64,000 nucleotides of DNA from Styela clava (taxonomy: Eukaryota): assembly GCF_964204865.1 (NCBI RefSeq), contig NC_135250.1, positions 1,426,001 through 1,490,000 of the forward strand. The letters are read 5' to 3'. Below the pieces are notes generated by a model. The model worked only from the letters and a program-made list of their open reading frames with translations. It had not been told where the DNA came from and searched no databases. The translations under genes and the position numbers were made by a program. How positions within the stretch are numbered: the first letter of the stretch is position 1; each line of letters begins with the position of its first letter. Positions 9,040 through 47,963 of this stretch are shown in pieces.

Positions 9040-12000
9040 TTATTCGAATGCAGCATTCGAGGAGCCAGAACTTTCACCTTTCAATGCTCTAGGGACCACA
9101 TGAGCACTCACATGTCCTGTAAAAAAACAAACGGAATCATCATCACAATTATTATCTGTCAATATTGGGCATGTCTGCCACCAGGTATATTCATGTAGAG
9201 CAGGGGTGTGCAAATTGCGACCGGCGGGCCAAATGCGGCCCACAAGGGAAAATTGTGCCCACGGAGAAGTGCCTGAGTGCAAACCTAGCAAGCAAAATCT
9301 TGTTGTAAAATATACAATGTTATAGAATACATGTTTTTCACCGAATTCGTTTGAAGTAGGTGGGACCATGAATTTGAAGACCAGTTTTCTTCAGAAATTT
9401 ATGCGTTTTAACTCACCATTTCTGTAGGACCCTAATAATGCCGTAAGATTAATAATATCAATTTCGTGCTGGCAACTACTAGAAAGGCTATCTTAAATAA
9501 AAGTGTGGCCCGTGGCTTCCCCCAGTTTTTTAGTATCAGGCACTCCTGTAATAAAGGTTGCACACCCCTGATGTAGAGTAATGATGTTGTTAGCAAAGCG
9601 ATGTCATTTGCCAGTATTTTGAATTTATTCCGAGCAAAACTTCCCCGGGGCGTCATGTCGTATATACAAGGTGTCTCAAAGTAAGTATACACTCTTCATT
9701 TTGATTTGCTTTTCTCGTACTAATCATAGAGCGTTTATTTCTTCAGAAAACACAGTATGGATTAGTTGTAAAATTTAGGTATTGTTTGCATTTTTTGTCA
9801 ACCCACAGAATGACAAGGAGATTAAGCCAAAAAATGAGGTGCAAAATTGCTGGCAAGAAGCATATAAATCAGTAAGGCAAACTCAACGCCTCTTTAACAG
9901 AGAATTTGGAATTAATTCGGCTCCTACACGACGCACAATTATGCAATTCATCATAAATGTATGGAAACTGGATCTGTAGTTTATGCACAAAGATCAGGAA
10001 GACCAAGGAGCGGTCGCTCTGGGGAAAACATTCGGAGCCAAATTAATTCCAAATTCTTTGTTAAAGAGGCGCTGAGTTGGCAGCTGTTTTGGCTTTAGTA
10101 TGTGGTGATTGATAATTCTCTCTGATTCGGAATAATCGGATAATTCAGAAAGAAGGTTGGGAACCAGTGATGTAGAGGAATCGAGTCACTTTGATAAATG
10201 ATGACTAGGGTCGATTCAATGACTCAGACCTTCCCTACCTGCTTTAACTGAAAGATGGTTTTGAACTTGATCCGGATTCACATTGATATTTGCACCATTG
10301 TTGAGAGTAACTCTTCCTCCATTTTCACCAAGGTTACATAGAGCTGCATGCAGATGCCCAATATGGTTCACAGTAGTAGGTTGCAGCTGTGCACCTGAAT
10401 ATCAGATAAGATAAGATTTAGATATTTATCTTGAGGGAGAGGAGAGCCGATAAGACGGCTTAACCATATGGCGAACCACAACCTCTCTTCTGGTTACCAT
10501 TTTATGTCGGGTATAGGATTAGTTAGTTATTTGTTTTCGGAAGCATGGACTTGATTGTTGAGTAAGCCGTAATTGACCAGCAGTTACTTGAACCACCCTA
10601 CTGCGGCGAGGAGTCTAGCAATCCTCTCGCACATAACTATCTCTGCATAGGATACAAACCTGCAAACCCACGCAGAGTAATCAGAGGTGCGGTGACGAGC
10701 GTATTCCTAACACTTAGCACGCTGAGCCACACCATCGCACCACGCACCTTTTTTAGAATTTTTCACGTTTCAAGCAGCGCCCTCTTTTTGGAATTTGTCA
10801 AGTCTCAAGCCCCATCTCAAAAATAAATAGCTAACAATAAGCTACAATTAACTGCTTGTAAGGCAGGAAAATAAGACAAGCACGATAGCTCTCTGCAATC
10901 TCTCAACAATGAAAAAATGTAAAAATCCATAACAAGGTGATCAAGATCAAATCTACAAATATTTTCATATTTAATTAGTTTCAAGCCCCCTCAAAAATTG
11001 TTTAACCCCCGTTGTGGGGCGCATCTCACCGTTTGAGAACCACTCCACTAAAGCATAATGCTTCATTATCAGTATAAATATTTTTAATAGCTGTTGATAT
11101 TTCAGTGCTTGGCCGTGATTTTGCTAACAGATAGAATATTAGCTTGGATTTTCAAGTTTGACCAAATGAAATTGACATATGGAAAACACTACTATCTATC
11201 TATACCTGTATTAATGGTAAATGGATTCGTTCTCAAAGTCCTGCTTGCTTGTCCATCTTCTTCTAGCTTGAATTCGAGAGTGTACTTTCCACTGTGGCGC
11301 GCTTCAACGCAGAAATTCAGTGACACCGCTTGGGCACCGAGCATGCATTGTTGTTCCATTTCATGGCCTTCCGCCGGGAAAATTTGCACGGTATTCTCTT
11401 TGCAACGAATGTTGTTCTTGTATTTCTTTGTGCTGTGAAGAACCACAGACATTGGTTTGGGATGAGCGGACTTGTAACCGTTTTCTTTCCACTCTTCAAC
11501 ATCGGCTTTCAAACTATTTTCTTCTGAGCCGTAAATAACTGTGATATCATGATCAGCCTTTACAAGAATATGCATCCTAATTTTGACCAATCCACCTATA
11601 AGGCAAGAAACATAGAACACATGGAAAAGTTTCATAATTCAAAGCTTTCAAGGTGACTTAAAATTGGTGGTTAAAGCATTCGACCCGTGGTTTCCCACCT
11701 TTTATGGATCATAGCCCAATTCCAAAGGCGTTTAGCACTCAAGGTCCTCTGTTTTTCATTCCTGTGGTATTCACAAGGTAATTTTGATTGATATATTCCA
11801 AATTCCATTATGTTTAAACAATATATGGAGTTTCTTGCGGAGTGAATGTGAAATAAGTTTTTCTCCTAGCTTTGTGGCCCTTCTCCAACTGTTCTGTGAC
11901 CACCTTGGGGGCCACGGGCCCCCAGTTGAGAATCGCTGTGTTAGACTTAATTATATAGATGATGCAGGTTAAATATCTTACAATTTTCAATTTCCATGCT

Positions 12001-27629: not shown

Positions 27630-28430
27630 TTAGCTAAGTTTACAGTTCGAATCATCTCTCCTCGATTCTTGTTGCGTTCGGCGTCTACTCGCAGCTCGTC
27701 TTTCTTCTTCCTCTCGTTGAAGCTCCTGAGCCATGATACGATCTTTCTCTTCTTGAGTGAGGGGTTTGGGTTCATCTGCTAATGACATTTGAAGTGCCCG
27801 GGCTAAAGCTTCGTCCTCAGAAAGATTTCCTTGTAATTGTGAAGTCGATATTCCACGATTTTGTCGCTCTGCATTTAAGCTTCGACCAAGATCGTTTAAA
27901 GTTGTTTTTTGTGGTCGTGTTTGCCTCGGTTGTGAAACCGTGTTTCTCGAACTTGAGGCTTTATTAAAACGAAAAATTGCAGCCACGCCAGAGTTTGAAA
28001 TCCCTCGTCCACTGCTTTGAAATCCTTTACAGTCATGGTCTTGCGTATGGCGGTGTCGCAAACAAAAGTTTTGCCGACAGTCTGGGCAAACAACTGGTAT
28101 GAGTTCTTTCTGTTTACACTTTGGAGCTGAACAACGATTAGAATACGCCTGCCTATGTTTTTTCGCTGGATCAGATTGACAATCTCGATCGATATGTTCT
28201 CCAACTTTTATGTCCGCCACTTCACCTCGTGGCACTGGCACTGGCTTATTACAAAGTGGGCAAACTGGAACTTGGACATCTTTCTTATAAGAAGATTCAC
28301 ATTTATGATCTTCGTATCGAATATGGTTTTTACAAAATTGCTTTTCACAAGCGTCGCACTTTATCGGTAAAAAGTCTAACTGGCGACAAAATGAATCTGA
28401 GCAATGGTCTCCTATTTTTGGCAACTCCAT
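27630..28430 (-). CDS. ZFAND2B: AN1-type zinc finger protein 2A/2B (AIRAP/AIRAPL-like), 266 aa, intronless CDS
   Basis: MELPKIGDHCSDSFCRQLDFLPIKCDACEKQFCKNHIRYEDHKC (AN1); CPLCNKPVP..VGEHIDRDC; second AN1 CSAPKCKQKELIPVVCPDCRQNFCLRHRHTQDHDC; VIM-like SGVAAIFRF; UIM LSEDEALARALQMSLAD; C-terminal CAAX CKLS. Confidence 0.95.
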   Translation of the reverse strand: MELPKIGDHCSDSFCRQLDFLPIKCDACEKQFCKNHIRYEDHKCESSYKKDVQVPVCPLCNKPVPVPRGEVADIKVGEHIDRDCQSDPAKKHRQAYSNRCSAPKCKQKELIPVVCPDCRQNFCLRHRHTQDHDCKGFQSSGRGISNSGVAAIFRFNKASSSRNTVSQPRQTRPQKTTLNDLGRSLNAERQNRGISTSQLQGNLSEDEALARALQMSLADEPKPLTQEEKDRIMAQELQREEEERRAASRRRTQQESRRDDSNCKLS

Positions 28431-32640: not shown

Positions 32641-33688
32641 TCAATTAACTATTACCGTATTTTACGGATCAAGGCGCACTTTAAATTCCTTTTTGCCAAA
32701 AATTGATTATGCGCCTCATAAGCCGGCTCGCCTACTGTATTGATCAGGTACTGTGCTTTATTACCTACAATCAAAACCATTACCAGTACCCGTAAAGTCT
32801 TATAATCCGCTTTATATAAGAACGAAAATTCAATCTGAGCATTTTGTTGCTTTATTTTTAACAGTTTTTTTTCGTTCGCGGTGGGAAACGATTTTGTAAA
32901 ATGTTTTTTTTTGTAAAAAATACAGCATGACAAATATAACACACACAGAAATACAAATTGCAAAGCCAAACACGGCGATGTGAAACATTCTCCTGGTTGA
33001 AATTACGTACCTGTATCGCCTTTCCTGCGTTTTTATAACTATATGTGTAGGATATTATCATTTGCTATCTTGAAGGCATATTTAAGTATCAAGAGTAAAA
33101 CTTACGATATATCTCCGCTAGAATCGTATGTGAGCTATATGCAAACATTGTTTACCATCCGGGAGTCTAGTTCAAGTTCCCGTTTGCAACAATCGTCCTT
33201 TGTTCGTCTTAACTTCGGTCGGTTCTAGTATGTGCAGAAAGAAAGAAATGTTGTCTGTATTGAGTTGGTTCAGACAGTTAAATCGGGGAAATTGTTCCTG
33301 CGACCGAAAATCGGCTTTGGCATCGCATATATAGTTCAAGTGTGTACACATAAAAATAACTGTAATAGAGATGGTACACGGAGTAAGTTGTGTGAAATCG
33401 TTCTTGTAATTAAAGTTCAATTATCAAGGATTTGAATATTTTCAAATTTCATTACAGAGTCACCTTAATTGTGACTTAGTTTCATTTAATTCATACTGAG
33501 TGCTTATTGCCGCGATATATGTATATATATCAACAAAACAAAATACACTTCATATTTTTTCACAAAAATTATTTTTGGTTATTTTAAAAGAGCAATGCTG
33601 AGCAATATTTTTGAAAACAGCTAGAGTCTTGGACCATAATTAATGCATGAGCGTCGTTATTGTTCATTCAGAACTAGGAATAATAAAT

Positions 33689-35647
33689 ATGGATTTGTTA
33701 AAATTGTTAGGTCAGTCAATGGAAGGTGTTGGAGATCGACCGAGCACCTCGCGCAAAAATTCCGGACCGGTAGATATCCATAGTGGATTCCAGGGACTTA
33801 TTGACGAGCTCGATACAATGGCGGAAGCTGTAGGCATTCCCAAGAGTCAACTTCTTGACACATGGGCCACCCTTGGTATTACCAAAGCATATCGTCACAG
33901 TCGACAACGCATATTCAAAGTGGCTGATAAAATATCGGCGGGCTTGGTTGGCAATGAAACTATAAAGAATATCAGAGGCGTTGAAACGCCATTATCGAGC
34001 GTGGAAGAGTGGGATTTTCAATTGGGTGATATGGTAAAAGTTAAATACCCATTAAAAGATTTCGAGTCCATTCAGAGGAGGACTATAGGTTGGGTGCCAC
34101 GTCTTGCTTTAGTACATGGTCACATTGGAGTAGTAACTAAAATCGCGTCAAAATTTGACAATGCTATCAACGTTTTGTTTCGCGATATTTTCCATAGTTG
34201 TACTCTGTATGCAGGCGTTCTTGAAAAGGTCTCAACTGACAACATTGTTCATCGTTCTTCGCGATGGAAAGTCGGAGATATAGTCAAACTAAATTCTGAC
34301 GGTTTACTTGTACCTTTGTTACAGATCGGATTGGGATATATTCCCAAGGAATGCTTCGGTAAGAAAGGGAGAGTCACGGCCATAGCTCCTTTTCACGTGG
34401 AGGTGACGTTTAATGGGATGGAAAGCATCCAAATATCTTCTGCTTTGTTAGAATCGTGCGCTGACCAGGTCCCTATCGCAAGAACTAACACAGCTTCAAT
34501 TACCAACTTTGGAGTCGGCGAAAGAGTCAAAGTAATTGACAACATGAAAAATCTGATTGCAAATCAAAAAGATGAAGGTGGCTGGTACAAAGAAATGAGC
34601 AAAATTAAGGGACAGGAAGTAACCATCGTCATTATCGGAGAAGACTCAACTCTTCATGTACAAGCTATACATGGTCGATCTTGGATAGTTTCATCCAAAT
34701 CCTTATTAAAGTTAGACGCCCAACAACCTGCCTTCGACGATGATTTGAAATTTTCTCCAAAGGATTTAGTCAAAATAAAAATTCCTCAAACTATTCGAAT
34801 GACGCTCGGCTCACAAAATATTCCGTTCATATTTCTTGAATATCTGAGAACAGTTGGTGAAATAGTGTACGTTGATGACACGCTCAACTGCTATGTCAAG
34901 TTCAACAAATCGCAAAAAATTATGGTGAACCCCCGAGCTCTCAGAAAACCTACGGCGAACGAAGTCGTGAACTATCAGAACATTCAAGCTCAAGTTGACA
35001 ATATCAAGCAAGGTGACGACGTTCTTCTTGATGTCGGCCCGCCCAACTATGTTCAAGCCGTTCTTCAAGATTCAGATTTTGATGGACAGGTGAAAATGGC
35101 ACTGACTAATCCTGCAAAACTTGTGGGTTTTATTGACTACGACACAGCGGTCATTGAATACCAAAGTGGCGTGAGATACCGAATTGGAATGAAATATCTA
35201 ACAGTTCCTGACAAATTCAAGGCGAAAGATACTAAAACTATATTGGATTTCAAGACCGCGGAAGCGATACGTGACATGATCGCCAAAGCCGTACGTGCCC
35301 TCACTGCCCTGTATAATGAAGATGATATGGATGCAATTAACTGTAATGTCGATGTCACATCCCTGGTATATGGCTGCCCTCCTTCTATAGAGGTGCGCAT
35401 TCAATTATTGACCGCACAACTTGAAGATGTGGTTAGTTGGCTACAGAAATATTCCGGTTGGGAAATTTTCGAATTTTTCCCAGGCCAATTCCTCTTGACC
35501 GAAGTCGACGGATTTGATAGCGAGATAAAGCTGTCAATTATTTTCAACGACAACGGAAATGTTGTTGAGGAACAACGTCTTACCGTCGCCACGAGAAATA
35601 TTATCAATATAGCCCACGTAGATCAGGTGAACAACGTGATTAACTGA
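33689..35647 (+). CDS. Mind bomb SH3 (REP/SH3_15)-repeat protein 1, about 652 aa, single coding exon; no RING/ankyrin/ZZ
   Basis: Long uninterrupted ORF. Five repeats of the form F.hGD.V.h......Q...GW......G..G.V..h.....h.V.f......h....L (DFQLGDMVKV, RWKVGDIVKL, NFGVGERVKV..QKDEGGWYKEM, KFSPKDLVKI, NIKQGDDVLL). The start was moved to MDLLKLL (33689) because it aligns with the paralog's MDLAELL and follows a splice acceptor ttcattcag at 33671. Confidence 0.85.
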   Translation: MDLLKLLGQSMEGVGDRPSTSRKNSGPVDIHSGFQGLIDELDTMAEAVGIPKSQLLDTWATLGITKAYRHSRQRIFKVADKISAGLVGNETIKNIRGVETPLSSVEEWDFQLGDMVKVKYPLKDFESIQRRTIGWVPRLALVHGHIGVVTKIASKFDNAINVLFRDIFHSCTLYAGVLEKVSTDNIVHRSSRWKVGDIVKLNSDGLLVPLLQIGLGYIPKECFGKKGRVTAIAPFHVEVTFNGMESIQISSALLESCADQVPIARTNTASITNFGVGERVKVIDNMKNLIANQKDEGGWYKEMSKIKGQEVTIVIIGEDSTLHVQAIHGRSWIVSSKSLLKLDAQQPAFDDDLKFSPKDLVKIKIPQTIRMTLGSQNIPFIFLEYLRTVGEIVYVDDTLNCYVKFNKSQKIMVNPRALRKPTANEVVNYQNIQAQVDNIKQGDDVLLDVGPPNYVQAVLQDSDFDGQVKMALTNPAKLVGFIDYDTAVIEYQSGVRYRIGMKYLTVPDKFKAKDTKTILDFKTAEAIRDMIAKAVRALTALYNEDDMDAINCNVDVTSLVYGCPPSIEVRIQLLTAQLEDVVSWLQKYSGWEIFEFFPGQFLLTEVDGFDSEIKLSIIFNDNGNVVEEQRLTVATRNIINIAHVDQVNNVIN

Positions 35648-36522
35648 AACCAAATTTCCACTTTACCACAGATTTTTTTTTATAGTATGTACATATCAAG
35701 ATACTGTTCACAGTTTGATAAAGTACTTCATATTTAAATCAAGTGTTTTTTCTCGTTCCACTTTCGACTGAGCGATTTCTGAATTCTATAAAATGGAAAT
35801 ATTGTCGATCGAACTTATTTGGCTTCGGTTGTCTTGCGCAATACCATCCATCACCCAAATATGTTAATATTTGTATTTGTGATACGGAGTGGAACACGGC
35901 AATATGCAAGAAAACCTTCTGTATGTTAAAAACAATGAGCAAAAGTAACCCTCTCGGAAAGTTGTTTCTGACAAACTAAATGGGAGATTGAACTGTTAAG
36001 TTCGATGCTGTATAGTTGTAATTTTGTAAAGGCATGATCGTTTTTACTCGTATTTTATTTGTATATATTGCAACTTTATATTATATTAAAAACTGGAAAA
36101 AAAAAATTCTGATTTCTTCTTATTTCAAAAGTGCAAACATTCTATCGTATTTGGGCCGTACATTCATATATATATTTTACTTATTCATCCATAACTATTA
36201 CGGCACACATGTTTACCAATGCTTTAAAACTACATTAACACTATGAGCAATGTGTCGCGTAACACTATACTAGGGTTGAACACTGGTGACGGTGGTTTAC
36301 GGGTAAAGGTCGACGAATTTGTACAAACTCTATGGTAAATGCTTGAATCACCCAAGCATAAACCCTGTTCGACATCTTCGTTCAACAAGCGCTGTTCAAT
36401 CTACAGTTAATTGAAACATTAACATCAATTCCAATTATCAGAACAATATTGTGGATCTTCATTCTGACAAAAATATTTTGACAAAATAATTATACACACA
36501 AACATTTATATATACATTTTAC

Positions 36523-36747
36523 GGTGCTCCCGAAGTATGCGAACCAAGATGGCGGACATCGGAACGTAGAATGGGTAACAGGTTAGGGTTAGGCCATAAT
36601 TTTCCTTATTTTAGTCCTATTATCAGTTCGAAGACTAGCCAAGAGCCTCCCGTAGTATTTATACCTAAAATTATGGCCTAACCCTAACCTAGTACACTTA
36701 TTACATTCCGATGTCCGCCATCTTGGTTCGCATACTTCGGGAGCCCC
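36523..36747. mobile_element. Palindromic MITE with long TIRs, internal GGTTAGGGTTAGG and 8-bp TSD
   Basis: GCTCCCGAAGTATGCGAACCAAGATGGCGGACATCGGAA inverted at both ends; TSD CATTTTAC. Confidence 0.9.
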
Positions 36748-37761
36748 CATTTTACTATTCGCGTGATTTTAAGCTTTAGTGACAGCTATAACAAGCATTT
36801 CAGATTTCAAATCTTAGATTGTTTTGATATCATGGGTGAGGGATAAGCCCAACGTGAGAATGGCCAACTAGGGAAAAGAGTTTGGACTTCGAATCAAAAA
36901 AATCAAATCTTCGATTGGAGTAATGGATTCATTAACTCTCTTTTTCCTAATGATATATATATTCGTACTACCATCCTTGGTCATAATATGACAATAATAG
37001 TTATTTTCGGACTATTTTACGTTTATGTTCATGTTTTGTGAAGTATTCCCGCACTAACTAAAATCCTTTTAGGCTTCCAACTATGATCCGTGCTTGATCC
37101 GTCAAAATTTTTTTTTTTGTAAATTTTTTATTCTACTACTAGGTGAATTTTATTTGTGTAGATATTTCAAAGCTTAGAGATACACGAAAGTATTTGTCAT
37201 TACTTCAAAGATAAGTCATTTGATCGAGCGGGAAACAATTTCGCGCACATAATAAACAAACAAAGATTCCAGACAACTATCGTGAACATGCTCTTACATA
37301 TCATTGAATATTTCGCGTTTCGCTTCGCTTGCGAAGCTGAGTCTGGTTTTCTGCAAAGGTGACGTAATGCTCTTTGAGCAGAGCGCTTAAATCTTGTTTC
37401 TTTGTAACACGTGTTCATCGGAGCGATGAGAGTGTGAAACGTTCTCTCAAAATTTTTTGAAATTTCTCTCTTCTTACCGGCGTAAGGTCGAACAGTTTGC
37501 GGGTACGTCATCTGGGCGCGTTTTAGTAGGAAGACGCGAAAATAAGCTTTTCAAAGAGATATTGGGGGTGTTCCTGGCACGTTTGGTTAACTAGTCATTA
37601 CATATTATAAAATGGTACAAAAATCGATTGTAACCAGCGGAAAAAAAGGGTTTTAATCACCGTGATTACCGCCATACTCAATATGTATTGAAATGGCAAT
37701 ACCAAATAGGGAAGATCCCGTTTAAATTCTGGCAACGGCACATTTGTTTACCAATGTTCTA

Positions 37762-38160
37762 ACGAGAATATCGGTTGGAAACCGAAGACTTATCGATCGA
37801 TAGTTAGGGGATCCCCAAAACAGAAACTGCAGTTTCGATTCATCCGCTCTTGTAACTTGCGCACTGCGCATCGCACACACACACTCGGCGGGTTTCAAAA
37901 TTCTCTCGCTTTACAAAAATCTAGATCACTATATCAATAATTGATTGATAACTCGCTAATTATACGACATAATTCGCCCAAAATCAATAGGCTTCTGGTC
38001 CGAGATAAGATGAATGCACATGCAAAATCTGGAGCAGATTCAATCTCGCTTTCGTGAGATATCGCGTGCATCTAACAGACAGACACACAGACAGACAGAC
38101 ATACATACATACATACAAATACCTATCAATATACTTACCGATCTTAAGATCGATAAGTAA
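37762..38160 (-). mobile_element. Second HINE/DINE-like copy (longer, inverted)
   Basis: Reverse complement of the 24792-25082 ends and core; (AGAC)n(ATAC)n microsatellite; hairpin tcggttggaaaccga. Confidence 0.72.
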
Positions 38161-38658
38161 CTACATTAACACAGTGAGTCGTGTAACACTATATTAGTGT
38201 TGAACACTGGTGCCGTGTGACATGTTTGTATTTTTATCAGCGGTTGTTTACGAGTTAACGTCGGAGAATTTGTACAAATTTTATGATAAATGCTTGAATC
38301 ATTCAAGCATAAACCTTGTTCAACATCCTCGCGCGGTAGCATTGTATTTTAGCAAGCGCTGTTCGATCTATAGTTAATTGAAGCATAAACATCAATTTCA
38401 AATATCAGAAAAATATTGTGATCTTTATTCTAACAAAAATATTTGGAGTAAATAATTATACACACAAAGTATAAGAGCTTTTCTACTGAGGTTGCTACTT
38501 CTTTAGGTTTAGATCGTTCGGAATTCCATAAATCGGGTAGCCGTTTATCCGAGGTCATCAATTAGATATCCTTATATATATTTTTTGATCATTTGCATAA
38601 GGATAACAAATCATTTTTATCACGGGGGTGAAGACAGCTGATACGGCTTGATGATTTG

Positions 38659-41600
38659 TAGGGGAGGGGGAGGGGCAAATTATTCGATTAGCGAATTGAA
38701 TATCAAAATATTCGAATGGCATTTCATTATTCGCATATCCGGTACCAGGTGACCTGCGACGCTTTGGTTGGGCGCGGAACTCGCGCGTTTCTAAATCAAT
38801 CGTGGAATTTTGCGAGAATTCACCCACGGCGCTTGCTAACAGACAAAAGCTACAAATTCGAGAAGTTTTTGTGTTTGCGTTATGGTGATATTTGCTTTTA
38901 TTATGAGCCTAACGTATTGTTTCAATCGTCTCGTAAATTCAGAAACATCAAACCAAATTACCCAGATTCTAAACTCCGTATGTCTGGTGACATGCAATTA
39001 GTAGGGATGCGACAAGATTCGGATTCGTGGCCGAATCTCTCGTAATTTGATACTCGGATTCGGCCCGAGTCTTTGATGATTTTACCCGAGTCCGGGATAT
39101 CATACGTCACGCGATAGTCAAGCGCAGACTGGTGGCGGATTCGACGAGAAATTCTATTTTCTCTACGGTGAAATTAAAACTAGGCGCCAAAACTACAAAT
39201 TCACGAGGCCGTAAGAACAAAATAATGTCAGCGAAAGTCAGCTGAATAAATTCCAGTGTTGCGCGTGTAGCTTGTCTTCCAGTGCCAGACGTCGTTTAGT
39301 GAATGTTTACCACGTCCTATTTCAAGCATATACTTGCTAATCCTCTAACAGTGATTAATCCGTAATCAGCGGTAACCATGTCGCGCTGTTCGCCTTTTAT
39401 CGTTTCATAAATGATCTAGCTATTTTCGGAGAGAAACAAATGTTAGAAATAAAATAGTGAAAATTACGGTTCTTTTAAGAGAAAAGTACAACTCGCAGAT
39501 GTCAGTGGCGTTACAATCGTATATATGTACAAAAACAATCTCGCAAGTCGCATCGATTAAATGTGCATAAATTTGAAAACTATTACTCGTGGTAATTGGA
39601 TGTTAATCGGGCCGACTTCTTATTTTTATTCAATGATTATTTACATACGCCGCGATTAGTGACGGGCAAGATCGAATTTTTCCTGATCGAATAATTCGAC
39701 TACCGTATTTCTTTTAATTTACCGATAGTAGAAAATTACTAGAACACTGGAGACTCGAAAACAACGCGGCGTCTTTACTTCTTATCCGTAATTTTATCAC
39801 AATCGTGAATTGTTTTTTTGTCACCGCGATCGTTTCGGCGACCGACATCCTAATTATGGTTGGTAAACTATATTTTTAAAGCACCCTTTTTCACTATCAG
39901 TTCTCACGCAACGCCGGACATCGAAGTTTCGTTTTTATATTTCAGGCAGAAGTGTGAGTACAAATCGGAGAAGATATTAAAGACAGCTATTAATTAGTGA
40001 ATTCATAAACATATTAATTTTATTCTGGTCTTATCTTCTGGATTTGATCTTCCATATCACAGTTTGTAAATTACGGTCCCTATTTTAAGCGAACAATACC
40101 TATCGTGGCTGTGTTATTTTAATATTAGATAATAAATAAAAACTCCGGAAATTTACCATTGCGTGCTGTTTCGAGTTATGGCATTTCTACCTAGTCGAAA
40201 CAATATTTCCATATAATACATAATTTACCTGCCTCACTTAATCTGGTTTGACGTTTCTATATGTGAAAAGGTGTTGGCGCGCTTTATGCAAAATTGGGAA
40301 TTGTTAAGATAACGATAGGCGCAGAAAGAAAACCCTAATAATTCTCACATTTATCGTTTCTGTCTGTTAGCGAGAGTCGTATGTGAATTCTTAACTCGTA
40401 ACTCTCACTTCTAAATTAATGTTAATAAATTTGATTTTGCTTTTTGAAGCGCCGTTATTTGTATTAATGAAAATGGTTGTGTCATACAGCCGTAACTTAG
40501 CATATAACACATTTCGCCTTTTGCGTCTCTCTTATTGAATCAAAATCAACAATTACACATTCTTATTTTCCGCGGATTCGACAATAGCTATTGATGGTTT
40601 TCAAACGAAGAATAGCTAGCTTTTTTGTTACGATATATTTATAAGATACATTTATTCGATGCTTCCACAGTTGGCAATTCTTTATTAATATCTCAATTTT
40701 CACGGAGATGGGCGTCTGTATCAGCGCCGACTAAAAAAGTTACATATGAGTAAAAATTTCCCATAAAAAATTTGTTCCAAACGTGTGGGTTATGGCCCGT
40801 ATTTATCGTGACAGGACACGAGCGCGGCGTCATCAGCAGTCGACGCGGCGGTCGATCAGAGTTACGTAACAAAGTATTCCTTTGACCGGGAATATGACCT
40901 ATTTATTCTAATTTAAACTAGTCGCTCAGAGAATGATTGTCTCGCAAGTAATAGTGTTTATGTGCAACGTATTTAAATTACATAGTCTTTTCATACAGAA
41001 TGTTTAATTTACGGCCAATATACGAGAACAACAGCATTACTTTAGGTATTTGTTTCGTAGCTATGTAAAAGTATTGGACTCGGGACTCGGACACGAGTCC
41101 AGCACAAATACTCGGGATTCGGCCGAGCCGAACCTTTTTGGATTCGTCGCATCCCTAGCAATTAGCCATTTTTTGCATGACCCAAACACAAAATTGATTA
41201 AAATGACGTTTTCGAGAGACCATACATGGTGAAAAAGAAATTTTAGGTTGTCAAAAAATTCGATTATATATAAATGCCATCGATTTGAAAATGACCTTTC
41301 AAGTTATTCCCAAAACTGGTATCAGTACTTGTATAAAAAACACTTATCAAGTTGTAATCAGATGAGAAATGTCAGGCCATAACCTTTAATATACTTTCTA
41401 TTAGCTCTTCAGAGATCGCTTTCATCCTTAACCAAGTAATGTTTCGAAAAAGCTAACATTTTGCTTGGCAATGCATGGACAGTGGAGTGTTGAAAGTGAG
41501 GGGGGGGGCGAACTTTGATCGCCAACGAAAAACACCACGCCGTATATCGTTACGCAACAATAACCTTTGAATGTCATTCTCTTAAGAATTAGAATGCCAT

Positions 41601-42542
41601 TTTACTACTTATGTATCGAGTACCTAATCCGCTTTGCTTGGACACGAAACTTGCGCATCACTAAACGGATCCCTTGAACTCCGCGAAAATCTCACGGCTC
41701 TAGCTTAGCAACAGAAATACCAAATTTGAGTCCCATTTAGGCGTTGTTTCAATTCTCAGTTTTGCATATAGCGCACCAACGCCGTTTCGTAAAATTGAAA
41801 TTGTCAAACAAGTTAACAAATTATTGAGCGAACTTTTACCAAGGAATTATTATTTTAGTAGTAGAATTGTCATTATTGCCTATTTATTGAATCGTTATTT
41901 GAACTCAAAATAACATTCAGGATTCAATGCAATGACTTTGCAGGGTTTTTATATATTATTTAATACGGAAATAAACATGCACAATTGAAAAGTAAATTCA
42001 TAAGTAGGCCAACTATGTTCTTCAAAAATATCCGCATCCGGGTGTCAGAAATGATAACGTTGTTTACCTAAAATTGGGACAGTTAATTTGCAAACGGTGA
42101 CGGAAAAGATCAAAGCCGCCGCAAAAGATAAAATGGGAATAAAATTCCGAATTCACTCCCTAAAAGCCGTCTTTAACATATGTTGCCGATATGAAATCGT
42201 AGTTCTCCCAGCAATATAAAACCAAACTTCGACGTGGCGTAAGTATTGGTGCTTGTAAAAAAAGGGGACAGCGGAAATGTAGCTCACCAAAATTAGAATG
42301 TCTCGCGTTATAGATGCGTGTTGTATATTTATTAAAACTACCCGATAATCGACAATTCACTGAAATATTGGAATTATTCAATTTACCGCTTTGTTGCCGA
42401 CTTTGCGATATTTATATTAATTTCCAACGGGAGTATCGACCTCCGACGTCCTAAACCCGTTGTGTATAAAAATAGATTCGTTATTCGGAATTCGTTAAAA
42501 ATATTCGATTCGAAAAAAAATATTCGATTTTGCTCACCTCTA
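38659..42542. mobile_element. Older hAT-like element that contains 39002-41157 and itself splits a SINE
   Basis: Degenerate ends tagggg..gaggggcaaattattcga / tcgattttgctcacctcta; subterminal ATTCG arrays; degenerate 8-bp TSD ATGATTTG / ATCATGTG. SINE pieces lie at ~38600-38658 and 42543-42630. Confidence 0.6.
39002..41157. mobile_element. Non-autonomous hAT-type DNA transposon (2156 bp)
   Basis: Perfect 12-bp TIR TAGGGATGCGAC / GTCGCATCCCTA; perfect 8-bp TSD GCAATTAG (38994-39001, 41158-41165); subterminal GGATTCG/GGACTCG repeats; no transposase ORF. Confidence 0.93.
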
Positions 42543-43413
42543 ATCATGTGGCAAACCACGGCCTCTTGTCCTGTACCAGTCCATGTTTTGGACTTTTTGA
42601 TGGAGAAAACCGTAACCGCCTAGCAGTTATGTGGATTTTAACAGGATATTTTTAAACCGTCTTCCTGGATAAGAAGCTTCCAAGGAAATGGTTTATAATG
42701 ACCGACGCTTTCCTGTTCGGCGCAGTCTACTTATTACACTCTGGTTCTCATGGTTTGACCAGGATGCCGATATCTTCTACCCGTGATATAAATAAGTCAA
42801 TATGTAAGTCAATATAAGCCGCTAGTGTCGTGTAGGAGCTACAAATATGGACCAAATGGCACCGCCCATGGTTATGGAGCCAAAACCATTCTGAATCATA
42901 TACGTTTTCCGGCAATAGGAAGACTATGCGTTTTAGTTAAGCTGTTAGCGCGCCTTCTCTTTTGAAAATCTTAGGGCAACTTTGTTTTCGAAAATCGTTA
43001 GAAAATACGATGTCTGTGTGCAATTGTTATTATTTTTACTGTTTTTAGTTAATACTGAACTTATCAGTATTACCGGACTTATTTCCTGATAGTTATAGCA
43101 CTATTAGGTTGAGTTAAGAATAGCTCATGTAAATCGGGCAGCATTTATTCAACCTGACATCGGAACCAAAATCAACAACGAGTAGATATATCGTCCCAAC
43201 CAAGTTGGTTTCGCCTCTAACTCAATATTTACTCGTTCACAGATGAAATTTCAAATTTCGCAAAGACTTGCATTTTTTGCAGATTCATACCAGGTAGCTA
43301 AGTTACAATCTTTTTTTTTAAATAGCTTTAAAAGTAATTCTTGACTTGAAATATTCTGGTAGTCAAGTTCAAATTGACACTTATTCAGACTGGTTCAATA
43401 CATATAATAAGGC

Positions 43414-45630
43414 ATGGATTTAGCCGAATTGTTACGTCAATTGAAGGATTGCGATGATAGCCTACCCGACCTTATGAGTCCGGAATCTCCAGGTGACAAA
43501 TTGACCGACGCTCTCGATGCCTCGAAAGCACTCGAAGCCTTGAAAGAACAGCTAGGGATTTCTAAACCCAACCTTTCCAACATTTCGTCGCTAATTAACC
43601 ACATATATATTAGTAGTCGATCGCGCATATTCAAATTGGCTGATAAATTAGCGGTGACGTTTGATGGAGACGAAATAGTAAACGCAAAACGAGGCCAAAT
43701 TCCCTTACCAGCCGAGGAGAAGTGGGATTTTAAATTGGGCGATCGGGTCAGGGTTAAATGCTCACTGAAAGATTTTGAATCGGTACAGAGAAGAACCATA
43801 GGCTGGACAACCCGTCTTGTCGTAGTTCATGGCCATACCGGGGTGGTGACCGACGTCGCATCTGAGTACGACAACGTGATCAATGTTTTATTCCTGGATA
43901 TTTTTCAAGGCTGTAGTCTGTACGCAGGCGTTCTTGAAAAAGTTCCCACTGTAGATGTTACTAGCCATCTTTCACGGTGGAAGATAGGAGATATGGTCAA
44001 ACCCAAGGTCGATACTCTGCTCGCAAAAAAGCTACAGAGTGGGCTGAAAGCAATTCCCAAGAATTTGTTAGGCAAGAAAGGGAAAGTTACTGCAGTAGCA
44101 CGTTTTCATGTTGAAGTTACGTTTGACGACAAAGAAAGCGTTCAAGTCTCTGCTGCTCTGCTGGTTCGCAGCGAGGACCAGTCGCCTATCACAAAATCAA
44201 GCCCAATCAGCAATTTCAAGGTTGGCGAAAAAGTTAAAATTATTCGAAACATGAAAAGCCTGATTTCGAACCAAAACAACAAAGGTGGTTGGAACAAGGA
44301 AATGTGTAAATTGCGAGGACAAGAAGTGGTGATTGGTAGTATTCACACAGATTCCTCACTTATCGTACACGCAAAACACGCTCGACCATGGAGGGTGTCT
44401 CCTGATTCAGTGTTGCCGCTCGATGTTGAGGAAATTGTCTCCACCAAAGACTTGGACTTTTTACCCGGCGATTTGGTTAAAGTAAAAATCCATCCGAATG
44501 TGGGAATGACACTCGCATCGCAGAATATTCCGATGGTGTTTCTTGAGTATCTCAGAGGGGTTGCTCAAGTAGCTTCCGTGGATGATGATTTTGACTGCTT
44601 TGTCAAATTTAATCAGTCGCAAAAGTTCATGATGAAACCTGACGCCCTTGAAAAACCCACTGCAGCGGAAATCGAGAAGTTCAAGAGGATTCAAGCTCGT
44701 GTCAAGGATCTCACAGTGGGTGATGAAGTTCACATAGATGTCGGTCCTCCGAATTATGTCAGAGTGATTCTTAGAGATTCAGATTTTGAGGAAAACGTGA
44801 GGATGGCACTGGTCAACCCGGCTAAACTTGTTGGTTTCATTGATTACGACACGGCTGTCATTGAATACCAAGGTGGCTCAAGATTCAAAATCGGAATGAA
44901 ATATTTAACGGTTGCCGATAAATACTTGGTAAAAGATGCCAAAAAGATTTTGGATTTTGACACCGCTAAATCCTTACGTGACATGATTGCAAAAAGCGTT
45001 CATGATATATGCAATGAGCAAGATTTAGGTGAAAACAACTGCAAAGTCGATGTCACCTCTATGACATACGGATCTCCTCCTTCCATAGAAATACGCATTC
45101 AATCTGTGATGGCTCAACTTGATAATATCGTTCAACGCTTACAGCAAGTAACTGGATGGAAAATCGCCAGTGTTTGCGACGGACAGTATTTTGTGACTGG
45201 AGTCGCGGGATTTGATAGCGAGATAAGCCTGTCCATAATCTTTAACGACAGCGAAAGTATTGTTGAGAAACAAGGTGTTAGAACTTCAATCGAAACTTTT
45301 GAGGAGCCTATAGCCAGTGAAAATGAAGCAATAGGTTTCGTAGATGACGAGGAACCAATCGCTTCTCCGCCCGGTGGTAATCAGCAGCAACCCCTGGCTC
45401 ATCGCAACCCAAATGTGAGAAGTCTAAGAGAATTCAGATATTATTGTCTCTATGATCGCCAACTTGGGCACACTGTCTACTTCCCATACGTTATCCGGGG
45501 TCAGAGACGGGTTTCAGCTGAGTTCCTGGAAGAAGGACTTCCGGACCCGAGAGAACCAACCGTGATAAATAATAATTATGTGCAATGTGCTGGGAATTTC
45601 GGAAAGATCAAGTATTCCCAGATTGTTTAA
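43414..45630 (+). CDS. Mind bomb SH3 (REP/SH3_15)-repeat protein 2, 738 aa, single coding exon; tandem paralog of 33689-35647
   Basis: Collinear with paralog 1 (e.g. KDFESVQRRTIGW, LYAGVLEKV, NPAKLVGFIDYDTAVIEYQ, GFDSEISLSIIFND), plus an extra C-terminal segment of about 90 aa. Acceptor ttattcag at 43388 lies just upstream of the ATG. Confidence 0.88.
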   Translation: MDLAELLRQLKDCDDSLPDLMSPESPGDKLTDALDASKALEALKEQLGISKPNLSNISSLINHIYISSRSRIFKLADKLAVTFDGDEIVNAKRGQIPLPAEEKWDFKLGDRVRVKCSLKDFESVQRRTIGWTTRLVVVHGHTGVVTDVASEYDNVINVLFLDIFQGCSLYAGVLEKVPTVDVTSHLSRWKIGDMVKPKVDTLLAKKLQSGLKAIPKNLLGKKGKVTAVARFHVEVTFDDKESVQVSAALLVRSEDQSPITKSSPISNFKVGEKVKIIRNMKSLISNQNNKGGWNKEMCKLRGQEVVIGSIHTDSSLIVHAKHARPWRVSPDSVLPLDVEEIVSTKDLDFLPGDLVKVKIHPNVGMTLASQNIPMVFLEYLRGVAQVASVDDDFDCFVKFNQSQKFMMKPDALEKPTAAEIEKFKRIQARVKDLTVGDEVHIDVGPPNYVRVILRDSDFEENVRMALVNPAKLVGFIDYDTAVIEYQGGSRFKIGMKYLTVADKYLVKDAKKILDFDTAKSLRDMIAKSVHDICNEQDLGENNCKVDVTSMTYGSPPSIEIRIQSVMAQLDNIVQRLQQVTGWKIASVCDGQYFVTGVAGFDSEISLSIIFNDSESIVEKQGVRTSIETFEEPIASENEAIGFVDDEEPIASPPGGNQQQPLAHRNPNVRSLREFRYYCLYDRQLGHTVYFPYVIRGQRRVSAEFLEEGLPDPREPTVINNNYVQCAGNFGKIKYSQIV

Positions 45631-47963
45631 CAAGTTGTGTTACATCACTTAACCCAAGCAACAACAACATATAAGTCATTGAACAAATCGTGTCGTCCAA
45701 TCACAACCAACCTCTCTGAGAAGAGATAATTTAACAAAACTATTGGAGATGTCTAACTCTTAATTTTAGGCCGTCTGCAGCGAATTGCAATATATATTCG
45801 ATTGCGCGTTCGCCATACCAATTATGAGTGTATACATTAATATATTAGTAGTAGTTGCATAATTTTTGAACAAAACAGATTGTGTGTACATGCGTATTCA
45901 AAGCATAGCGCATTAGTGTTCGTCACCAATTCAACATTTTATCCTCGTTGCAAAATACGAGACATTGATGATCGTTTACATAATTATATTACAATTTTTT
46001 CATTACTTATGTTATATGGGCTAAGTGCACTAGGATATTGTTTATTGAACTGCAGATCCTTTTTCTTTGTTTATTTTCTACGGATTCGTATCTGCCGTTG
46101 TCATTAGAATGCTTGAATGGGATGGTAATTGAGGCGACAAATTGAACTTCTCATTTTTTTCTGAAAAATTAGACTAGTGATCTGACAAATGTACTTACTA
46201 TTTCGTGAAAAGTGATTAGGTTATTCTTAATTACTCAAGGTTCTCCATTATATTGGAGGATAAATTTAGACACAGATAAGGAAATTTGGTTCGTCATTAT
46301 AAGTCAAAAATTCCAATTCGTTATTTTATAGAGTGAAGTATACTATTGCATGATTAACCATTGTTAAAATACAACTTTACATGATTATTTATGTACGTAA
46401 TATTAAAAATTTCTTGTAATTTATTTTTCCAAGTTCATTCATATATGGTGACATTGGGTAGTCGTTAATTTCAATTCGGTATTAAATGAGGAAACCTTTG
46501 AATTTATATTGGACATGTTTATCCATATACGCAATACATCTATATCCTAGGCAACAACGTCTTGTTTTTGGTCATATTCATGCTGTCGCTGTTCCACTTG
46601 AGGAAATTAGCATATATATCATACAGTTTTAATTTTAGAATGACGAGTCATTAAAAACAAAGAGGCTCATTGCAAACAAAGGTGGGAGAGCATTAACAGA
46701 TACGCGGAAGGAAATGATTTTGAATCAGTCAGATGCGCCAACATCAATGATAACCACTTACTGATTGAAGGCTGAAACAGTTAGTTGTGGCCTCGAATGA
46801 CATAGCATATTCATGCCTTTTTCAATATTTGGCCGAGCTCTACGTAGAAATGTTCTTGCATTTGTTCAATTTAAACGTAATTACTGTTAATCTAAAATCA
46901 TCTTAAATGGCCACGCTAAATGAGCGCAACTCAAACGTGTATTCAAATCGTAGTTTCGCTTAAGACCTTGTCAGCCAAATTATAGCGTATAGCGCTGCAT
47001 GTTCCTTGCTTATCTTATTTAACATCTTATTCTTTGCCTTTAATCTATAAGAAATCTAATTGCGTCTTCAGTCGACTACGGGACCTATACAACTAACTAA
47101 TCGAATTCGTTCAAGTCAAATCCAAATGTTAATTTAGTCCTTTTTCTCCGGTTTAATTAACGGTGGAAATATTGCACACATATACTTTTCCCGGCAAATG
47201 ATGAGACTGAGGCCCCACATATGAAACAAAGACATGACGAGGTTAGCAATTTCACAATTGAATTATATGGGAAAATTTGTGCTTTGAATTCTCAATACAC
47301 TTTTGTTCTACTTAGGTGTGGCGAAGACAGCTATCTGAGTTGTCACCTCCAATTATATATACAAGATGTACAAAAACAGCGCCCGTCATATGCCCTATTA
47401 TTCATGTATCTATGTGGTCATAAAACGCTCATAAATCCTTAAAAAAATGTTTAAGTTGCAATCACTAGTGCGCAAAAATGAGTCTTCCTTACTTCGCGTG
47501 ACATTCCAGTGGGAAATTTCTCATAAAAAGGTATATACAACGGGACCGATCAGTTGTCAAATACTGAAGCTGCTGTTGGAAAATTTATTGATATTGATAA
47601 AAAACAAGGCAAGTCTAATAAGGCAGCGCCGAACCGGAAGGATATCGGTCATTTCAAATGAGAGTAGCTACTTCGATATCAGTGACTGCTTCTACAGGGA
47701 TATATTCGGAGCGTAAGGCCTGAATAAATGTCGTAAAAATTTTTTTCTGTTTTTTGGAATGGCTTGTTTGTCGTAAGCATGATGTCAACCTTATGTTAGT
47801 GCTACAGCGTGAGGCCCACCGCCATGTTTCGCCTAATTTTCAATTTTCGAATATAATTCTCTCATTCTCCCTTTTTGCATCCAGTATTTTAATTCGAAAT
47901 GAATCACACAGAAACAAAATACTATTTCTATATTTATTTCTCAGATTGTAATACATCAATTTG

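What the first reader, a model, noticed from the sequence alone, without database searches (positions are those of the whole stretch)
33689..45630. Tandem pair of intronless Mind-bomb-repeat-only proteins: 5x Mib SH3 repeats, no E3 machinery
Seen: two collinear single-exon ORFs, each with five repeats resembling the MIB1/MIB2 REP (SH3_15) unit. Known: animal Mind bomb has only two such repeats, framed by MIB/HERC2, ZZ, ankyrin and RING domains. The REP module helps bind substrates such as Notch-ligand tails, MIB2 acts on RIPK1/cFLIP death signalling, and long SH3_15 arrays are known from plant KEG. Inference: these are a lineage-specific, multivalent substrate-recognition family without ligase activity. 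They could be adaptors, sensors or dominant-negative decoys of Mind bomb. Both copies keep intact frames despite substantial divergence, which suggests selection.
Basis: partly seen in the sequence, partly recalled or inferred. Interest (0 to 1): 0.8.

Follow-up and report, generated by a model that had tools for sequence, protein, structure and literature searches.

The report
Ascidian kinase-less Mib-repeat scaffold genes
Two neighbouring intronless sea-squirt (Styela clava) genes encode proteins with five Mind-bomb-type SH3 repeats, a probably inactive nucleotidyltransferase-like end domain and no ubiquitin-ligase parts; they belong to a small, uncharacterised, ascidian-only family that most likely acts as non-enzymatic adaptors.

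Summary
There are two intact same-strand ORFs: W1 (33689-35647) and W2 (43414-45630). They are 54% identical, and both score far above Pfam's SH3_15 cut-off. A structure model plus repeat-to-repeat profile comparison support five SH3-like repeats in each.

No RING, ZZ, MIB/HERC2 or ankyrin signal occurs in either protein or anywhere in the window. A probable RNA assembly carries W2 as one unspliced 3.2-kb contig. dN/dS between W1 and W2 is about 0.22.

The genome is Styela clava, where RefSeq names paralogs "uncharacterized protein". The genome holds about six intact paralogs plus broken copies. A search of 1.84 billion protein representatives found only about 21 family clusters, plus one distant Clavelina member.

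The proteins are not "repeat-only". After the repeats comes a roughly 100-residue Pol-beta-like nucleotidyltransferase fold without the catalytic acid motif. A conserved beta-hairpin motif follows, and an Asn-rich C-terminal motif ends the protein. That end motif does not match RHIM models.

The nearest array outside the family that I compared directly is an intronless RIP-like kinase with five SH3_15 repeats in the same genome, not Mind bomb.

Best reading: a kinase-less, ligase-less multivalent peptide-binding adaptor family. It is a new variant of a known kind, of moderate interest.

The parts
33689..35647 (+). W1 gene: 652-aa ORF from the start homologous to W2, stop codon included. An in-frame upstream ATG lies at 33647. 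W1 is the long form but lacks the linker and hairpin motif.
   Evidence: No W2-tail homology lies downstream of it.
33998..35242 (+). W1 five SH3_15-like repeats: R1 33998-34246, R2 34247-34492, R3 34493-34732, R4 34733-34990, R5 34991-35242.
   Evidence: Pfam per repeat and alignment to W2.
35246..35557 (+). W1 C-terminal nucleotidyltransferase-fold-like domain. Bounds are approximate and were transferred from W2 by alignment.
35582..35644 (+). W1 Asn-rich C-terminal motif.
   Evidence: Alignment A3. No RHIM hit.
43324..46547 (+). W2 transcript as seen in one collinear 3190-nt contig of a probable RNA run. The 5' UTR is about 90 nt and the 3' UTR about 917 nt. There is no intron.
   Evidence: tables 2, 5 and 8. 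Run X1 has zero depth in the flanks, while DNA run X10 is flat across the stretch.
43414..45630 (+). W2 gene: 738-aa ORF, stop codon included.
43530..43565 (+). 36-nt in-frame indel allele in the disordered N-terminal region. Its ends are AC..AA, so it is not an intron. The reference form is also present in run X4.
   Evidence: tables 5 and 8.
43564..43656 (+). W2 conserved N-terminal helix (aa 51-81).
43711..44949 (+). W2 five SH3_15-like repeats: R1 43711-43959, R2 43960-44199, R3 44200-44439, R4 44440-44697, R5 44698-44949.
44953..45255 (+). W2 C-terminal domain (aa 514-614) with a Pol-beta-like nucleotidyltransferase fold. The catalytic acid motif is not conserved.
   Evidence: pLDDT 84-97. 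Foldseek top 50 are nearly all NTase-fold proteins at E 3e-3 to 1e-2. VIA-align Z 8.7 to Pol beta and Pol mu. Motif reading from alignment A2.
45409..45495 (+). W2 conserved tail motif (aa about 666-694), predicted to form a beta-hairpin.
   Evidence: Conserved across the family. pLDDT 62-81 in the domain model.
45544..45627 (+). W2 Asn-rich C-terminal motif.
   Evidence: Alignment A3. Also present in the Clavelina relative. No RHIM hit.

Best explanation
W1 and W2 are a tandem-duplicated pair from a small ascidian-specific family of intronless genes in Styela clava. Each encodes a cytosolic, non-enzymatic scaffold.

The architecture, from N to C terminus, is:
- a conserved N-terminal helix;
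- five degenerate Mind-bomb-type SH3 (SH3_15) repeats;
- a small Pol-beta-like nucleotidyltransferase-fold domain that has lost the catalytic carboxylate motif;
- a disordered linker with a conserved beta-hairpin motif (lost in W1);
- an Asn-rich C-terminal motif.

Shown: the genes are real, W2 is transcribed unspliced, both copies are constrained, neither carries a ligase or kinase domain, and the family is confined to ascidians in what is sampled.

Inferred:
- The repeat array binds short linear peptide motifs multivalently, as the MIB1 REP domain binds the C-box of Notch-ligand tails.
- The pseudo-enzyme domain and tail motifs mediate partner binding or self-association.
- The array is collinear with that of a RIP-like kinase + SH3_15 protein in the same genome. 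The family also evolves by birth and death: tandem and inverted duplicates, frameshifted and transposon-broken copies, and polymorphic N-termini. For these reasons I think the proteins most likely act as kinase-less adaptors or competitors in that kinase's signalling, plausibly stress, innate-immune or cell-death related, rather than as regulators of Mind bomb.
For: Genes and domains.

Unspliced transcript. One 3190-nt contig is collinear with 43324-46547. Coverage is restricted to the gene in runs with 55-60 Mb of contigs, while a 360-Mb DNA run covers the stretch evenly. A second study (X4) also covers parts of the gene.

Selection: dN 0.34, dS about 1.55, omega about 0.22, and below 0.5 in every 80-codon window that could be computed. 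Younger paralog pairs give omega 0.33-0.46.

Family size and range:
- 13 matching places in the own genome, about 6 of them intact genes.
- Only about 21 full-length-type clusters among 1.84 billion representatives, followed by a clear gap to generic SH3_15 arrays.
- Named members are only Styela clava "uncharacterized protein" entries and a distant Clavelina lepadiformis protein.

C-terminal domain. The family consensus after the G-x-P-P turn is acid-h-Arg/Lys-h, not acid-h-acid-h.

Kinase relative: an 860-aa intronless ORF with Pkinase plus 5x SH3_15. Its kinase is closest to RIPK2, RIPK1 and RIPK3 (E about 1e-26). hhalign gives 99% probability that family repeats R1-R4 are collinear with its last four repeats.

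Peptide-binding role of REP: PMC11887331.

W1 and W2 are sister genes (SH-aLRT 99, quick tree).
Against: - No binding partner, localisation or phenotype is known, so the function is inferred from homology alone.
- The repeats are very diverged from MIB REP (17-20% identity in structural alignments), so peptide binding may not be retained.
- The runs taken as RNA are only guessed to be RNA by the tool.
- W1 expression was not tested.
- The NTase-fold assignment rests on Z about 8-9 and Foldseek E about 3e-3, which the tool itself calls borderline. No Pfam NTase model hits.
- The link to the RIP-like kinase is evolutionary (a shared array), not functional.
- There is no evidence of induction by infection or stress.
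Confidence: 0.55

Rival explanations
1. Mind bomb decoys. The repeat arrays compete with the MIB1/MIB2 REP domains for C-box-like motifs in Notch-ligand tails or other Mib substrates, damping ubiquitination.
For: They share the SH3_15 fold with MIB1 REP. REP binds the C-box of JAG1 and Delta. In flies, a Mib1 lacking MZM is dominant-negative in a REP-dependent way (PMC11887331).
Against: The repeats are only 17-20% identical to MIB1 REP in structural alignment. In the one direct comparison I made, they are collinear with a RIP-like kinase's array. MIB2 binds RIPK1 through MZM, not REP (PMC5912950). The extra conserved C-terminal domain and motifs have no place in a simple decoy model.
Confidence: 0.12
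2. Amyloid-type signalling adaptors. The Asn-rich C-terminal motif is a RHIM-like or other functional-amyloid nucleation motif that assembles the proteins into a signalosome, with the repeats recruiting clients.
For: The extreme C-terminal motif alternates Asn with hydrophobic residues. It is kept across the family, including in W1, which lost the linker motif, and in the Clavelina relative, which lacks the C-terminal domain.
Against: - No tail matches any Pfam family, the RHIM model PF12721 included, at E up to 10.
- A profile of the motif finds no RIPK1, RIPK3 or ZBP1 chain in the PDB at E up to 10.
- No RHIM hit occurs anywhere in the genome at E up to 1, although that is a weak test.
- The motif profile is so weak that its own members score only 13-15 bits, and it does not pick up the neighbouring FN3 gene's Asn-rich segment.
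- The motif is predicted disordered.
Confidence: 0.12
3. Active nucleotidyltransferase sensors (cGLR/OAS-like). The SH3 array senses a ligand and the C-terminal domain synthesises a nucleotide signal.
For: The C-terminal domain has an NTase fold. A cGAS-like receptor, OAS and CD-NTases are among the structural matches.
Against: The domain is only about 100 residues and lacks the helical second lobe. The second catalytic carboxylate position is Arg or Lys in most members, and the first and third are not conserved (alignment A2). No Pfam NTase hit. Short-form paralogs and the Clavelina relative lack the domain entirely.
Confidence: 0.04
4. Decaying retrocopies or transposon cargo without an organismal function.
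For: The genes are intronless and multi-copy. Several copies are frameshifted or interrupted by reverse-transcriptase-like ORFs.
Against: Both window copies keep 650-740-codon frames. Omega is about 0.22. W2 is transcribed. Similarity between W1 and W2 is confined to coding sequence, with no shared terminal repeats. Copy number is low, the copies are 36-57% identical to one another, and relatives exist in another ascidian order.
Confidence: 0.04

Closest known systems
MIB1/MIB2 REP domain (two Mib repeats, Pfam SH3_15 PF18346)
   Same: Same Pfam family, scored above the cut-off. The best solved-structure matches are 4xi6 and 4tse. In Mind bomb, the repeat is a peptide-binding module for the C-box of Notch-ligand tails.
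   Different: Five repeats instead of two, and much diverged. There are no MIB/HERC2, ZZ, ankyrin or RING domains. The genes are intronless, whereas the canonical Mind bomb genes of this genome are multi-exon and lie on other contigs.
RIP-like kinase + SH3_15 array proteins of invertebrate chordates (Styela clava C10:21.45 Mb ORF; amphioxus entries labelled ANKK1 or RIPK4)
   Same: Both are intronless in Styela and have five SH3_15 repeats. The family's R1-R4 are collinear with the kinase protein's last four repeats (hhalign 99%), including the unusual helical insertion and acidic strand of the fourth repeat.
   Different: The window proteins have no kinase domain. Instead they carry a fifth divergent repeat, an NTase-like domain and tail motifs.
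Plant KEG (RING-kinase-ankyrin-HERC2-like repeats)
   Same: A long array of repeats of this type is used for substrate binding and is combined with a kinase (PMC3697954, for the HERC2-like repeats). That these repeats fall under SH3_15 is from my own knowledge.
   Different: KEG is an active RING E3 with ankyrin repeats. It is a plant protein and no close relationship was shown here.
Pseudo-nucleotidyltransferase interaction domains (the DZF domains of NF45/NF90)
   Same: A Pol-beta-like NTase fold without the catalytic triad, used for protein-protein contacts. The NF90-NF45 dimerisation domain is the top Foldseek hit (4at7).
   Different: Only the minimal ~100-residue core is present here. 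There is no sequence similarity, and no dimerisation has been shown.
RHIM (RIP homotypic interaction motif)
   Same: A short C-terminal Asn- and hydrophobic-rich segment in proteins evolutionarily tied to a RIP-like kinase's array.
   Different: It fails the Pfam RHIM model and a PDB profile search, so it cannot be filed as RHIM.

Membership tests
SH3_15 / Mib-repeat-containing proteins (PF18346) | Whole-protein score above Pfam's gathering cut-off (24 bits) | tested here: met
   76.9 bits (W1) and 79.1 bits (W2). R1 and R3 each pass the cut-off on their own.
SH3_15 / Mib-repeat-containing proteins (PF18346) | SH3-like barrel fold matching solved Mib repeats | tested here: met
   Five barrels in the AF2 model. 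Foldseek gives 4xi6 at E 1e-10 and 4tse at E 4e-8.
Mind bomb E3 ligases (MIB1/MIB2) | N-terminal MZM module (MIB/HERC2-ZZ-MIB/HERC2) | tested here: not met
   No PF06701 or ZZ hit at E up to 1. MIB_HERC2 exon hits in the genome lie only on C6, C8, C17 and C19.
Mind bomb E3 ligases (MIB1/MIB2) | Ankyrin repeats and C-terminal RING fingers | tested here: not met
   No Pfam hit. No RING or ankyrin pattern in any frame of the window. The W2 transcript has no further exon.
Pol-beta-like nucleotidyltransferase fold superfamily | Core alpha-beta-alpha-beta-beta-beta palm fold | tested here: inconclusive
   Consistent NTase-fold hits: Foldseek E 3e-3 with prob 1.0 and VIA Z 8.7, rmsd 3.0, 94 residues aligned. 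The tool warns that Z near 8 can be a common arrangement. The Atlas structural neighbours are weak (TM < 0.4).
Pol-beta-like nucleotidyltransferase fold superfamily | Catalytic motifs hG[GS], [DE]h[DE]h and a third carboxylate | tested here: not met
   Alignment A2 shows G-[SC] kept in some members. The next strand reads acid-h-Arg/Lys-h, and the acid is itself lost in several members. No carboxylate is conserved on the third strand. The register was set from predicted secondary structure, not from a superposition.
Pol-beta-like nucleotidyltransferase fold superfamily | Sequence match to a curated NTase family | tested here: not met
   No Pfam NTase family at E up to 1.
RHIM-containing proteins | Match to the RHIM model (PF12721) or to RHIM segments of RIPK1, RIPK3 or ZBP1 | tested here: not met
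   Ten family and neighbour tails scanned at E up to 10 gave no RHIM hit. The motif profile against the PDB at E up to 10 found no RIPK or ZBP1 chain.
RHIM-containing proteins | Amyloid assembly of the motif | not testable with these tools
   This needs in vitro fibrillation or SDD-AGE.

The most novel reading that the evidence does not exclude
Ascidians, which show no canonical RHIM in this genome scan, use a private signalling module. In it, a RIP-like kinase carrying an SH3_15 array and its kinase-less relatives (this family) assemble through the Asn-rich C-terminal motif and the pseudo-nucleotidyltransferase domain. The result would be a higher-order, possibly amyloid-like, immune or cell-death signalosome: an independent invention analogous to RHIM-based necrosome assembly.
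Probability: 0.1. Interest if true: 0.75.

Novelty: new variant of a known kind. Interest (0 to 1): 0.42.

Why it matters
The finding defines an uncharacterised, ascidian-restricted protein family. Public annotation, where I could see it, calls its members "uncharacterized protein".

The family re-uses the Mind bomb substrate-binding repeat outside any ubiquitin ligase. It joins that repeat to a likely dead nucleotidyltransferase fold and two private tail motifs.

Its array is related to that of a RIP-like kinase in the same genome. This gives a concrete, testable entry point into how invertebrate chordates wire RIP-kinase-type signalling without the vertebrate adaptor set. It is also a natural case for studying what SH3_15 arrays bind.

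It is not a new principle. Lineage-specific adaptor families and ligase-free SH3_15 arrays exist elsewhere.

Tried and rejected
- **Splicing into a Mind bomb gene.** Rejected for W2 by the collinear 3.2-kb contig. Also rejected by the location of the real Mind bomb genes on C8 and C19.
- **RHIM identity of the tails.** Rejected: there is no Pfam or PDB-profile support.
- **A tail motif shared with the neighbouring FN3/UPA-like gene, as in amyloid gene pairs.** A motif HMM over the six-frame window did not find that gene. Paralogs of the FN3/UPA-like gene lie only in the same C1 cluster, not beside other family members. Not supported.
- **A missing W1 tail hidden in another frame or downstream.** tblastn found nothing.
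- **Literature search** for Styela clava with RHIM or Mind bomb. Nothing relevant was found.
  - The protein Atlas does not hold W2. With paralog P0157 it gave only weak structural neighbours.
  - The careful phylogeny did not finish, so only the quick tree is used.
- I stopped that step. The motif coordinates in "parts" were derived by hand from residue numbers and are approximate to a few codons.
- **W1 expression** could not be tested.

Full report
**What is there**

The stretch holds two long open frames on the + strand: 33647..35647 (666 aa) and 43414..45630 (738 aa). I call them W1 and W2.

They are 54% identical over about 637 residues. At 37% GC, I calculate by hand that frames of 650-740 codons without a stop have a chance of about 1e-20 or less. 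The window has no N runs, and no further family fragments lie elsewhere in it.

**Repeats**

Pfam SH3_15 (PF18346, "Mind bomb SH3 repeat domain") scores 76.9 bits for W1 and 79.1 bits for W2, against a cut-off of 24. No other family is credible.

Scanned one repeat at a time:

| Repeat | Result |
|---|---|
| R1 | passes the cut-off (28-32 bits) |
| R2 | weak (about 17 bits) |
| R3 | passes the cut-off (36-45 bits) |
| R4 | weak (15 bits, W2 only) |
| R5 | no hit |

An AlphaFold2 model was built from a 16-sequence family alignment. It shows five consecutive SH3-like barrels (W2 111-176, 194-252, 273-335, 354-407, 438-494; pLDDT about 78-90) behind a conserved helix at 51-81. Foldseek puts the MIB1 MZM-REP and Mib-repeat crystal structures first (4xi6 at E 1e-10, 4tse at E 4e-8). 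Spt5 KOW arrays, another SH3-like repeat, come next.

hhalign between the five repeat sub-alignments links R2-R4 (91%), R4-R5 (85%) and R1-R3 (74%). The five-repeat observation is therefore confirmed. R5 rests on structure and on the R4-R5 profile match.

**No ligase parts, no extra exons**

Pfam finds no MIB/HERC2, ZZ, ankyrin or RING domain in either protein. A regex scan of all six frames of the 64-kb window finds no RING, ZZ or ankyrin pattern.

Nine of the 13 public runs that hold W2 have only 51-79 Mb of contigs each, against a 377-Mb genome. The tool guesses these are RNA.

I laid three such runs and one DNA run on 41800-47799:
- Run X1 has one 3190-nt contig collinear with 43324-46547 and zero depth in both flanks.
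- DNA run X10 covers the stretch evenly.
- The only gap is a 36-nt in-frame skip (43530-43565) with ends AC..AA. It is an allele, not an intron, because run X4, from another study, carries the reference form.

W2 is therefore made as a single-exon mRNA with about 90 nt of 5' UTR and about 0.9 kb of 3' UTR.

The canonical Mind bomb genes of this genome are multi-exon. They lie on contigs C8 (23.198-23.203 Mb) and C19 (12.646-12.650 Mb).

**Selection**

Between W1 and W2, dN is 0.34 and dS about 1.55 (near saturation), giving omega about 0.22. Omega is below 0.5 in every 80-codon window that could be computed. Younger paralog pairs elsewhere in the genome give omega 0.33-0.46 at dS 0.13-0.36.

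**Organism and family**

A spliced RefSeq model identical to one broken paralog locus is named "uncharacterized protein LOC120331983 [Styela clava]". Two further paralogs are also Styela clava "uncharacterized protein" entries. The genome is therefore Styela clava, or something indistinguishable from it.

The assembly (377 Mb) has 13 matching places:
- W1 and W2 in the window.
- Full-length genes on C10 (721 aa) and C6 (730 aa).
- An inverted pair of short forms on C1, about 0.5 Mb away (489 and 493 aa). These end right after repeat 5 and start Met-Gly, a possible myristoylation site.
- Frameshifted copies on C13.
- A transposon-interrupted copy on C6.

All full-length matches are single open frames.

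A profile search of 1.84 billion representatives found 245 hits. Only about 21 clusters match over most of the profile in one stretch (E below 1e-58). After those comes a gap to generic multi-stretch SH3_15 proteins.

One weaker single-stretch hit is a Clavelina lepadiformis "uncharacterized protein". hhalign aligns its residues 85-525 with the whole five-repeat region at 98.8%. The family therefore spans at least two ascidian orders.

In a quick tree, W1 and W2 are sisters (SH-aLRT 99) inside a Styela-rich clade.

**Beyond the repeats**

The proteins are not repeat-only. W2 residues 514-614, folded alone with an 18-sequence alignment, give a confident alpha-beta-beta-alpha-beta-beta-beta domain with pLDDT 84-97.

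Nearly all of the 50 best Foldseek hits are Pol-beta-superfamily nucleotidyltransferases: the NF90/NF45 DZF domain, Pol mu, Pol beta, Cid1, TUT7, PAP and TdT. Their E-values are 3e-3 to 1e-2 with probability 1.0.

An exhaustive VIA-align scan gives Z 8.7 (rmsd 3.0, 94 residues) to Pol beta and Pol mu. Its top 21 rows are all the same fold, including a cGAS-like receptor, GLD-2 and OAS2. The tool warns that Z near 8 is borderline. I rate the fold as likely, not proven.

Reading the family alignment in the register of the predicted strands gives the following:
- The G-[SC] turn after strand 1 is partly kept.
- Strand 2 reads acid-h-Arg/Lys-h instead of acid-h-acid-h, and the acid itself is lost in several members.
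- No carboxylate is conserved on strand 3.

Together with the missing second lobe and the lack of any Pfam NTase hit, this points to a pseudo-enzyme used as an interaction module, as in the DZF domains.

A disordered linker follows the domain. Then comes a strongly conserved motif (W2 about 666-694), predicted as a beta-hairpin with pLDDT up to 81 in the domain model. W1 has lost the linker and this motif through a clean in-frame deletion.

At the very end of the protein there is an Asn-rich motif. It is kept in W1, W2, the paralogs, the foreign members and even the Clavelina protein, which has no NTase-like domain.

**Is the end motif a RHIM?**

I tested this four ways:
- Ten tails scanned against Pfam at E up to 10 gave no RHIM hit.
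- A profile of the motif found no RIPK1, RIPK3 or ZBP1 chain in the PDB at E up to 10.
- The Pfam RHIM model finds nothing in the genome at E up to 1. This is a weak test, and its controls were also silent.
- The motif profile does not pick up the Asn-rich segment of the neighbouring FN3/UPA-like gene. That gene's paralogs are not paired with other family members.

The motif is real and conserved, but it cannot be filed as RHIM. An amyloid role remains speculation.

**Closest relatives of the array**

SH3_15 arrays without Mib domains are common elsewhere:
- PH + 9 repeats in Paulinella.
- Neuralized + 13 repeats in amphioxus.
- 7 repeats + kinase in amphioxus.
- Ankyrin + 5 repeats in a protist.
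- A five-repeat-only protein in a tubeworm.

In Styela itself, C10:21.45 Mb holds an intronless 860-aa ORF with a protein kinase domain and five strong SH3_15 repeats. Its kinase is closest to RIPK2, RIPK1 and RIPK3 among solved structures (E about 1e-26).

hhalign aligns family repeats R1-R4 collinearly with its last four repeats at 99% probability. The alignment includes the unusual helical insertion and acidic strand of the fourth repeat.

The family therefore looks like a kinase-less offshoot of, or sister to, a RIP-like kinase's substrate-binding array, rather than a piece of Mind bomb.

**Mechanism**

*Known:* the MIB1 REP domain binds the C-box of JAG1 and Delta tails. A fly Mib1 lacking MZM is dominant-negative in a REP-dependent manner (PMC11887331). 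MIB2 binds RIPK1 through MZM, not REP (PMC5912950).

*Inferred for W1 and W2:* the five repeats bind short linear motifs multivalently. The pseudo-NTase domain and tail motifs provide partner binding or self-association. With no catalytic domain, the proteins would act as adaptors or competitors. The most plausible setting is the pathway of the related RIP-like kinase. The birth-and-death pattern of the family fits that setting: tandem and inverted duplicates, pseudogenes, a polymorphic N-terminus and very uneven presence between runs.

I hold the structural part of this reading at about 0.85 and the pathway assignment at about 0.35-0.4.

**Verdict**

This is a previously uncharacterised ascidian family with a new domain combination built from known parts. 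It is a new variant of a known kind and of moderate interest.

Noticed in passing
G000:C10:21449000-21454500 (L013:1902-4481, minus strand): An intronless 860-aa ORF encoding a RIP-like protein kinase domain followed by five strong SH3_15 repeats. Amphioxus has similar kinase + SH3_15 proteins, labelled ANKK1 or RIPK4. The architecture seems uncharacterised in chordates and recalls plant KEG without the RING.
   Followed up: partly
window 27630-28430 (minus strand): An intronless 266-aa gene with two AN1 zinc fingers, a ZFAND2-type C2H2 finger and a UIM (a ZFAND2-like stress protein), lying just upstream of W1.
   Followed up: partly
It is one of three tandem paralogs on C1. An Asn-rich ORF segment at 10216-10371 superficially resembles the family's tail motif, but the motif profile did not pick it up.
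   Followed up: partly
window 43324-43565: The expressed allele in run X1 differs from the reference at 13 of 206 bases at the 5' end and carries a 36-nt in-frame deletion. Over the remaining 2982 bases it differs at only 10. The N-terminal region is therefore unusually polymorphic.
   Followed up: no
window 42502-42532: A roughly 30-nt element with very high depth in all runs (about 575 against about 9 in the DNA run). It is a high-copy repeat fragment and is also present in the RNA-like runs.
   Followed up: no
window 36248-36503 and 38172-38470; 36523-36747: Two copies (85-90% identical), about 1.95 kb apart, of a ~260-300-bp composite segment made of four adjacent direct-repeat pieces, lying between W1 and W2. 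An 81-nt-arm inverted repeat (90% complementary, MITE-like) sits next to the first copy.
   Followed up: no
G000:C1:1985681-1993609 (L005, L006): An inverted pair of short-form family members (489 and 493 aa, 88% identical). They end right after repeat 5 and begin Met-Gly-Ala-Glu-Leu-Ser, a plausible N-myristoylation site. Several foreign short forms also start Met-Gly.
   Followed up: partly
G000:C6:2745468-2752531 (L010, L011): A family copy split by an insertion carrying reverse-transcriptase-like and zinc-knuckle ORFs. RefSeq models it as a spliced 441-aa "uncharacterized protein" (P0012), but it is probably a broken gene.
   Followed up: partly
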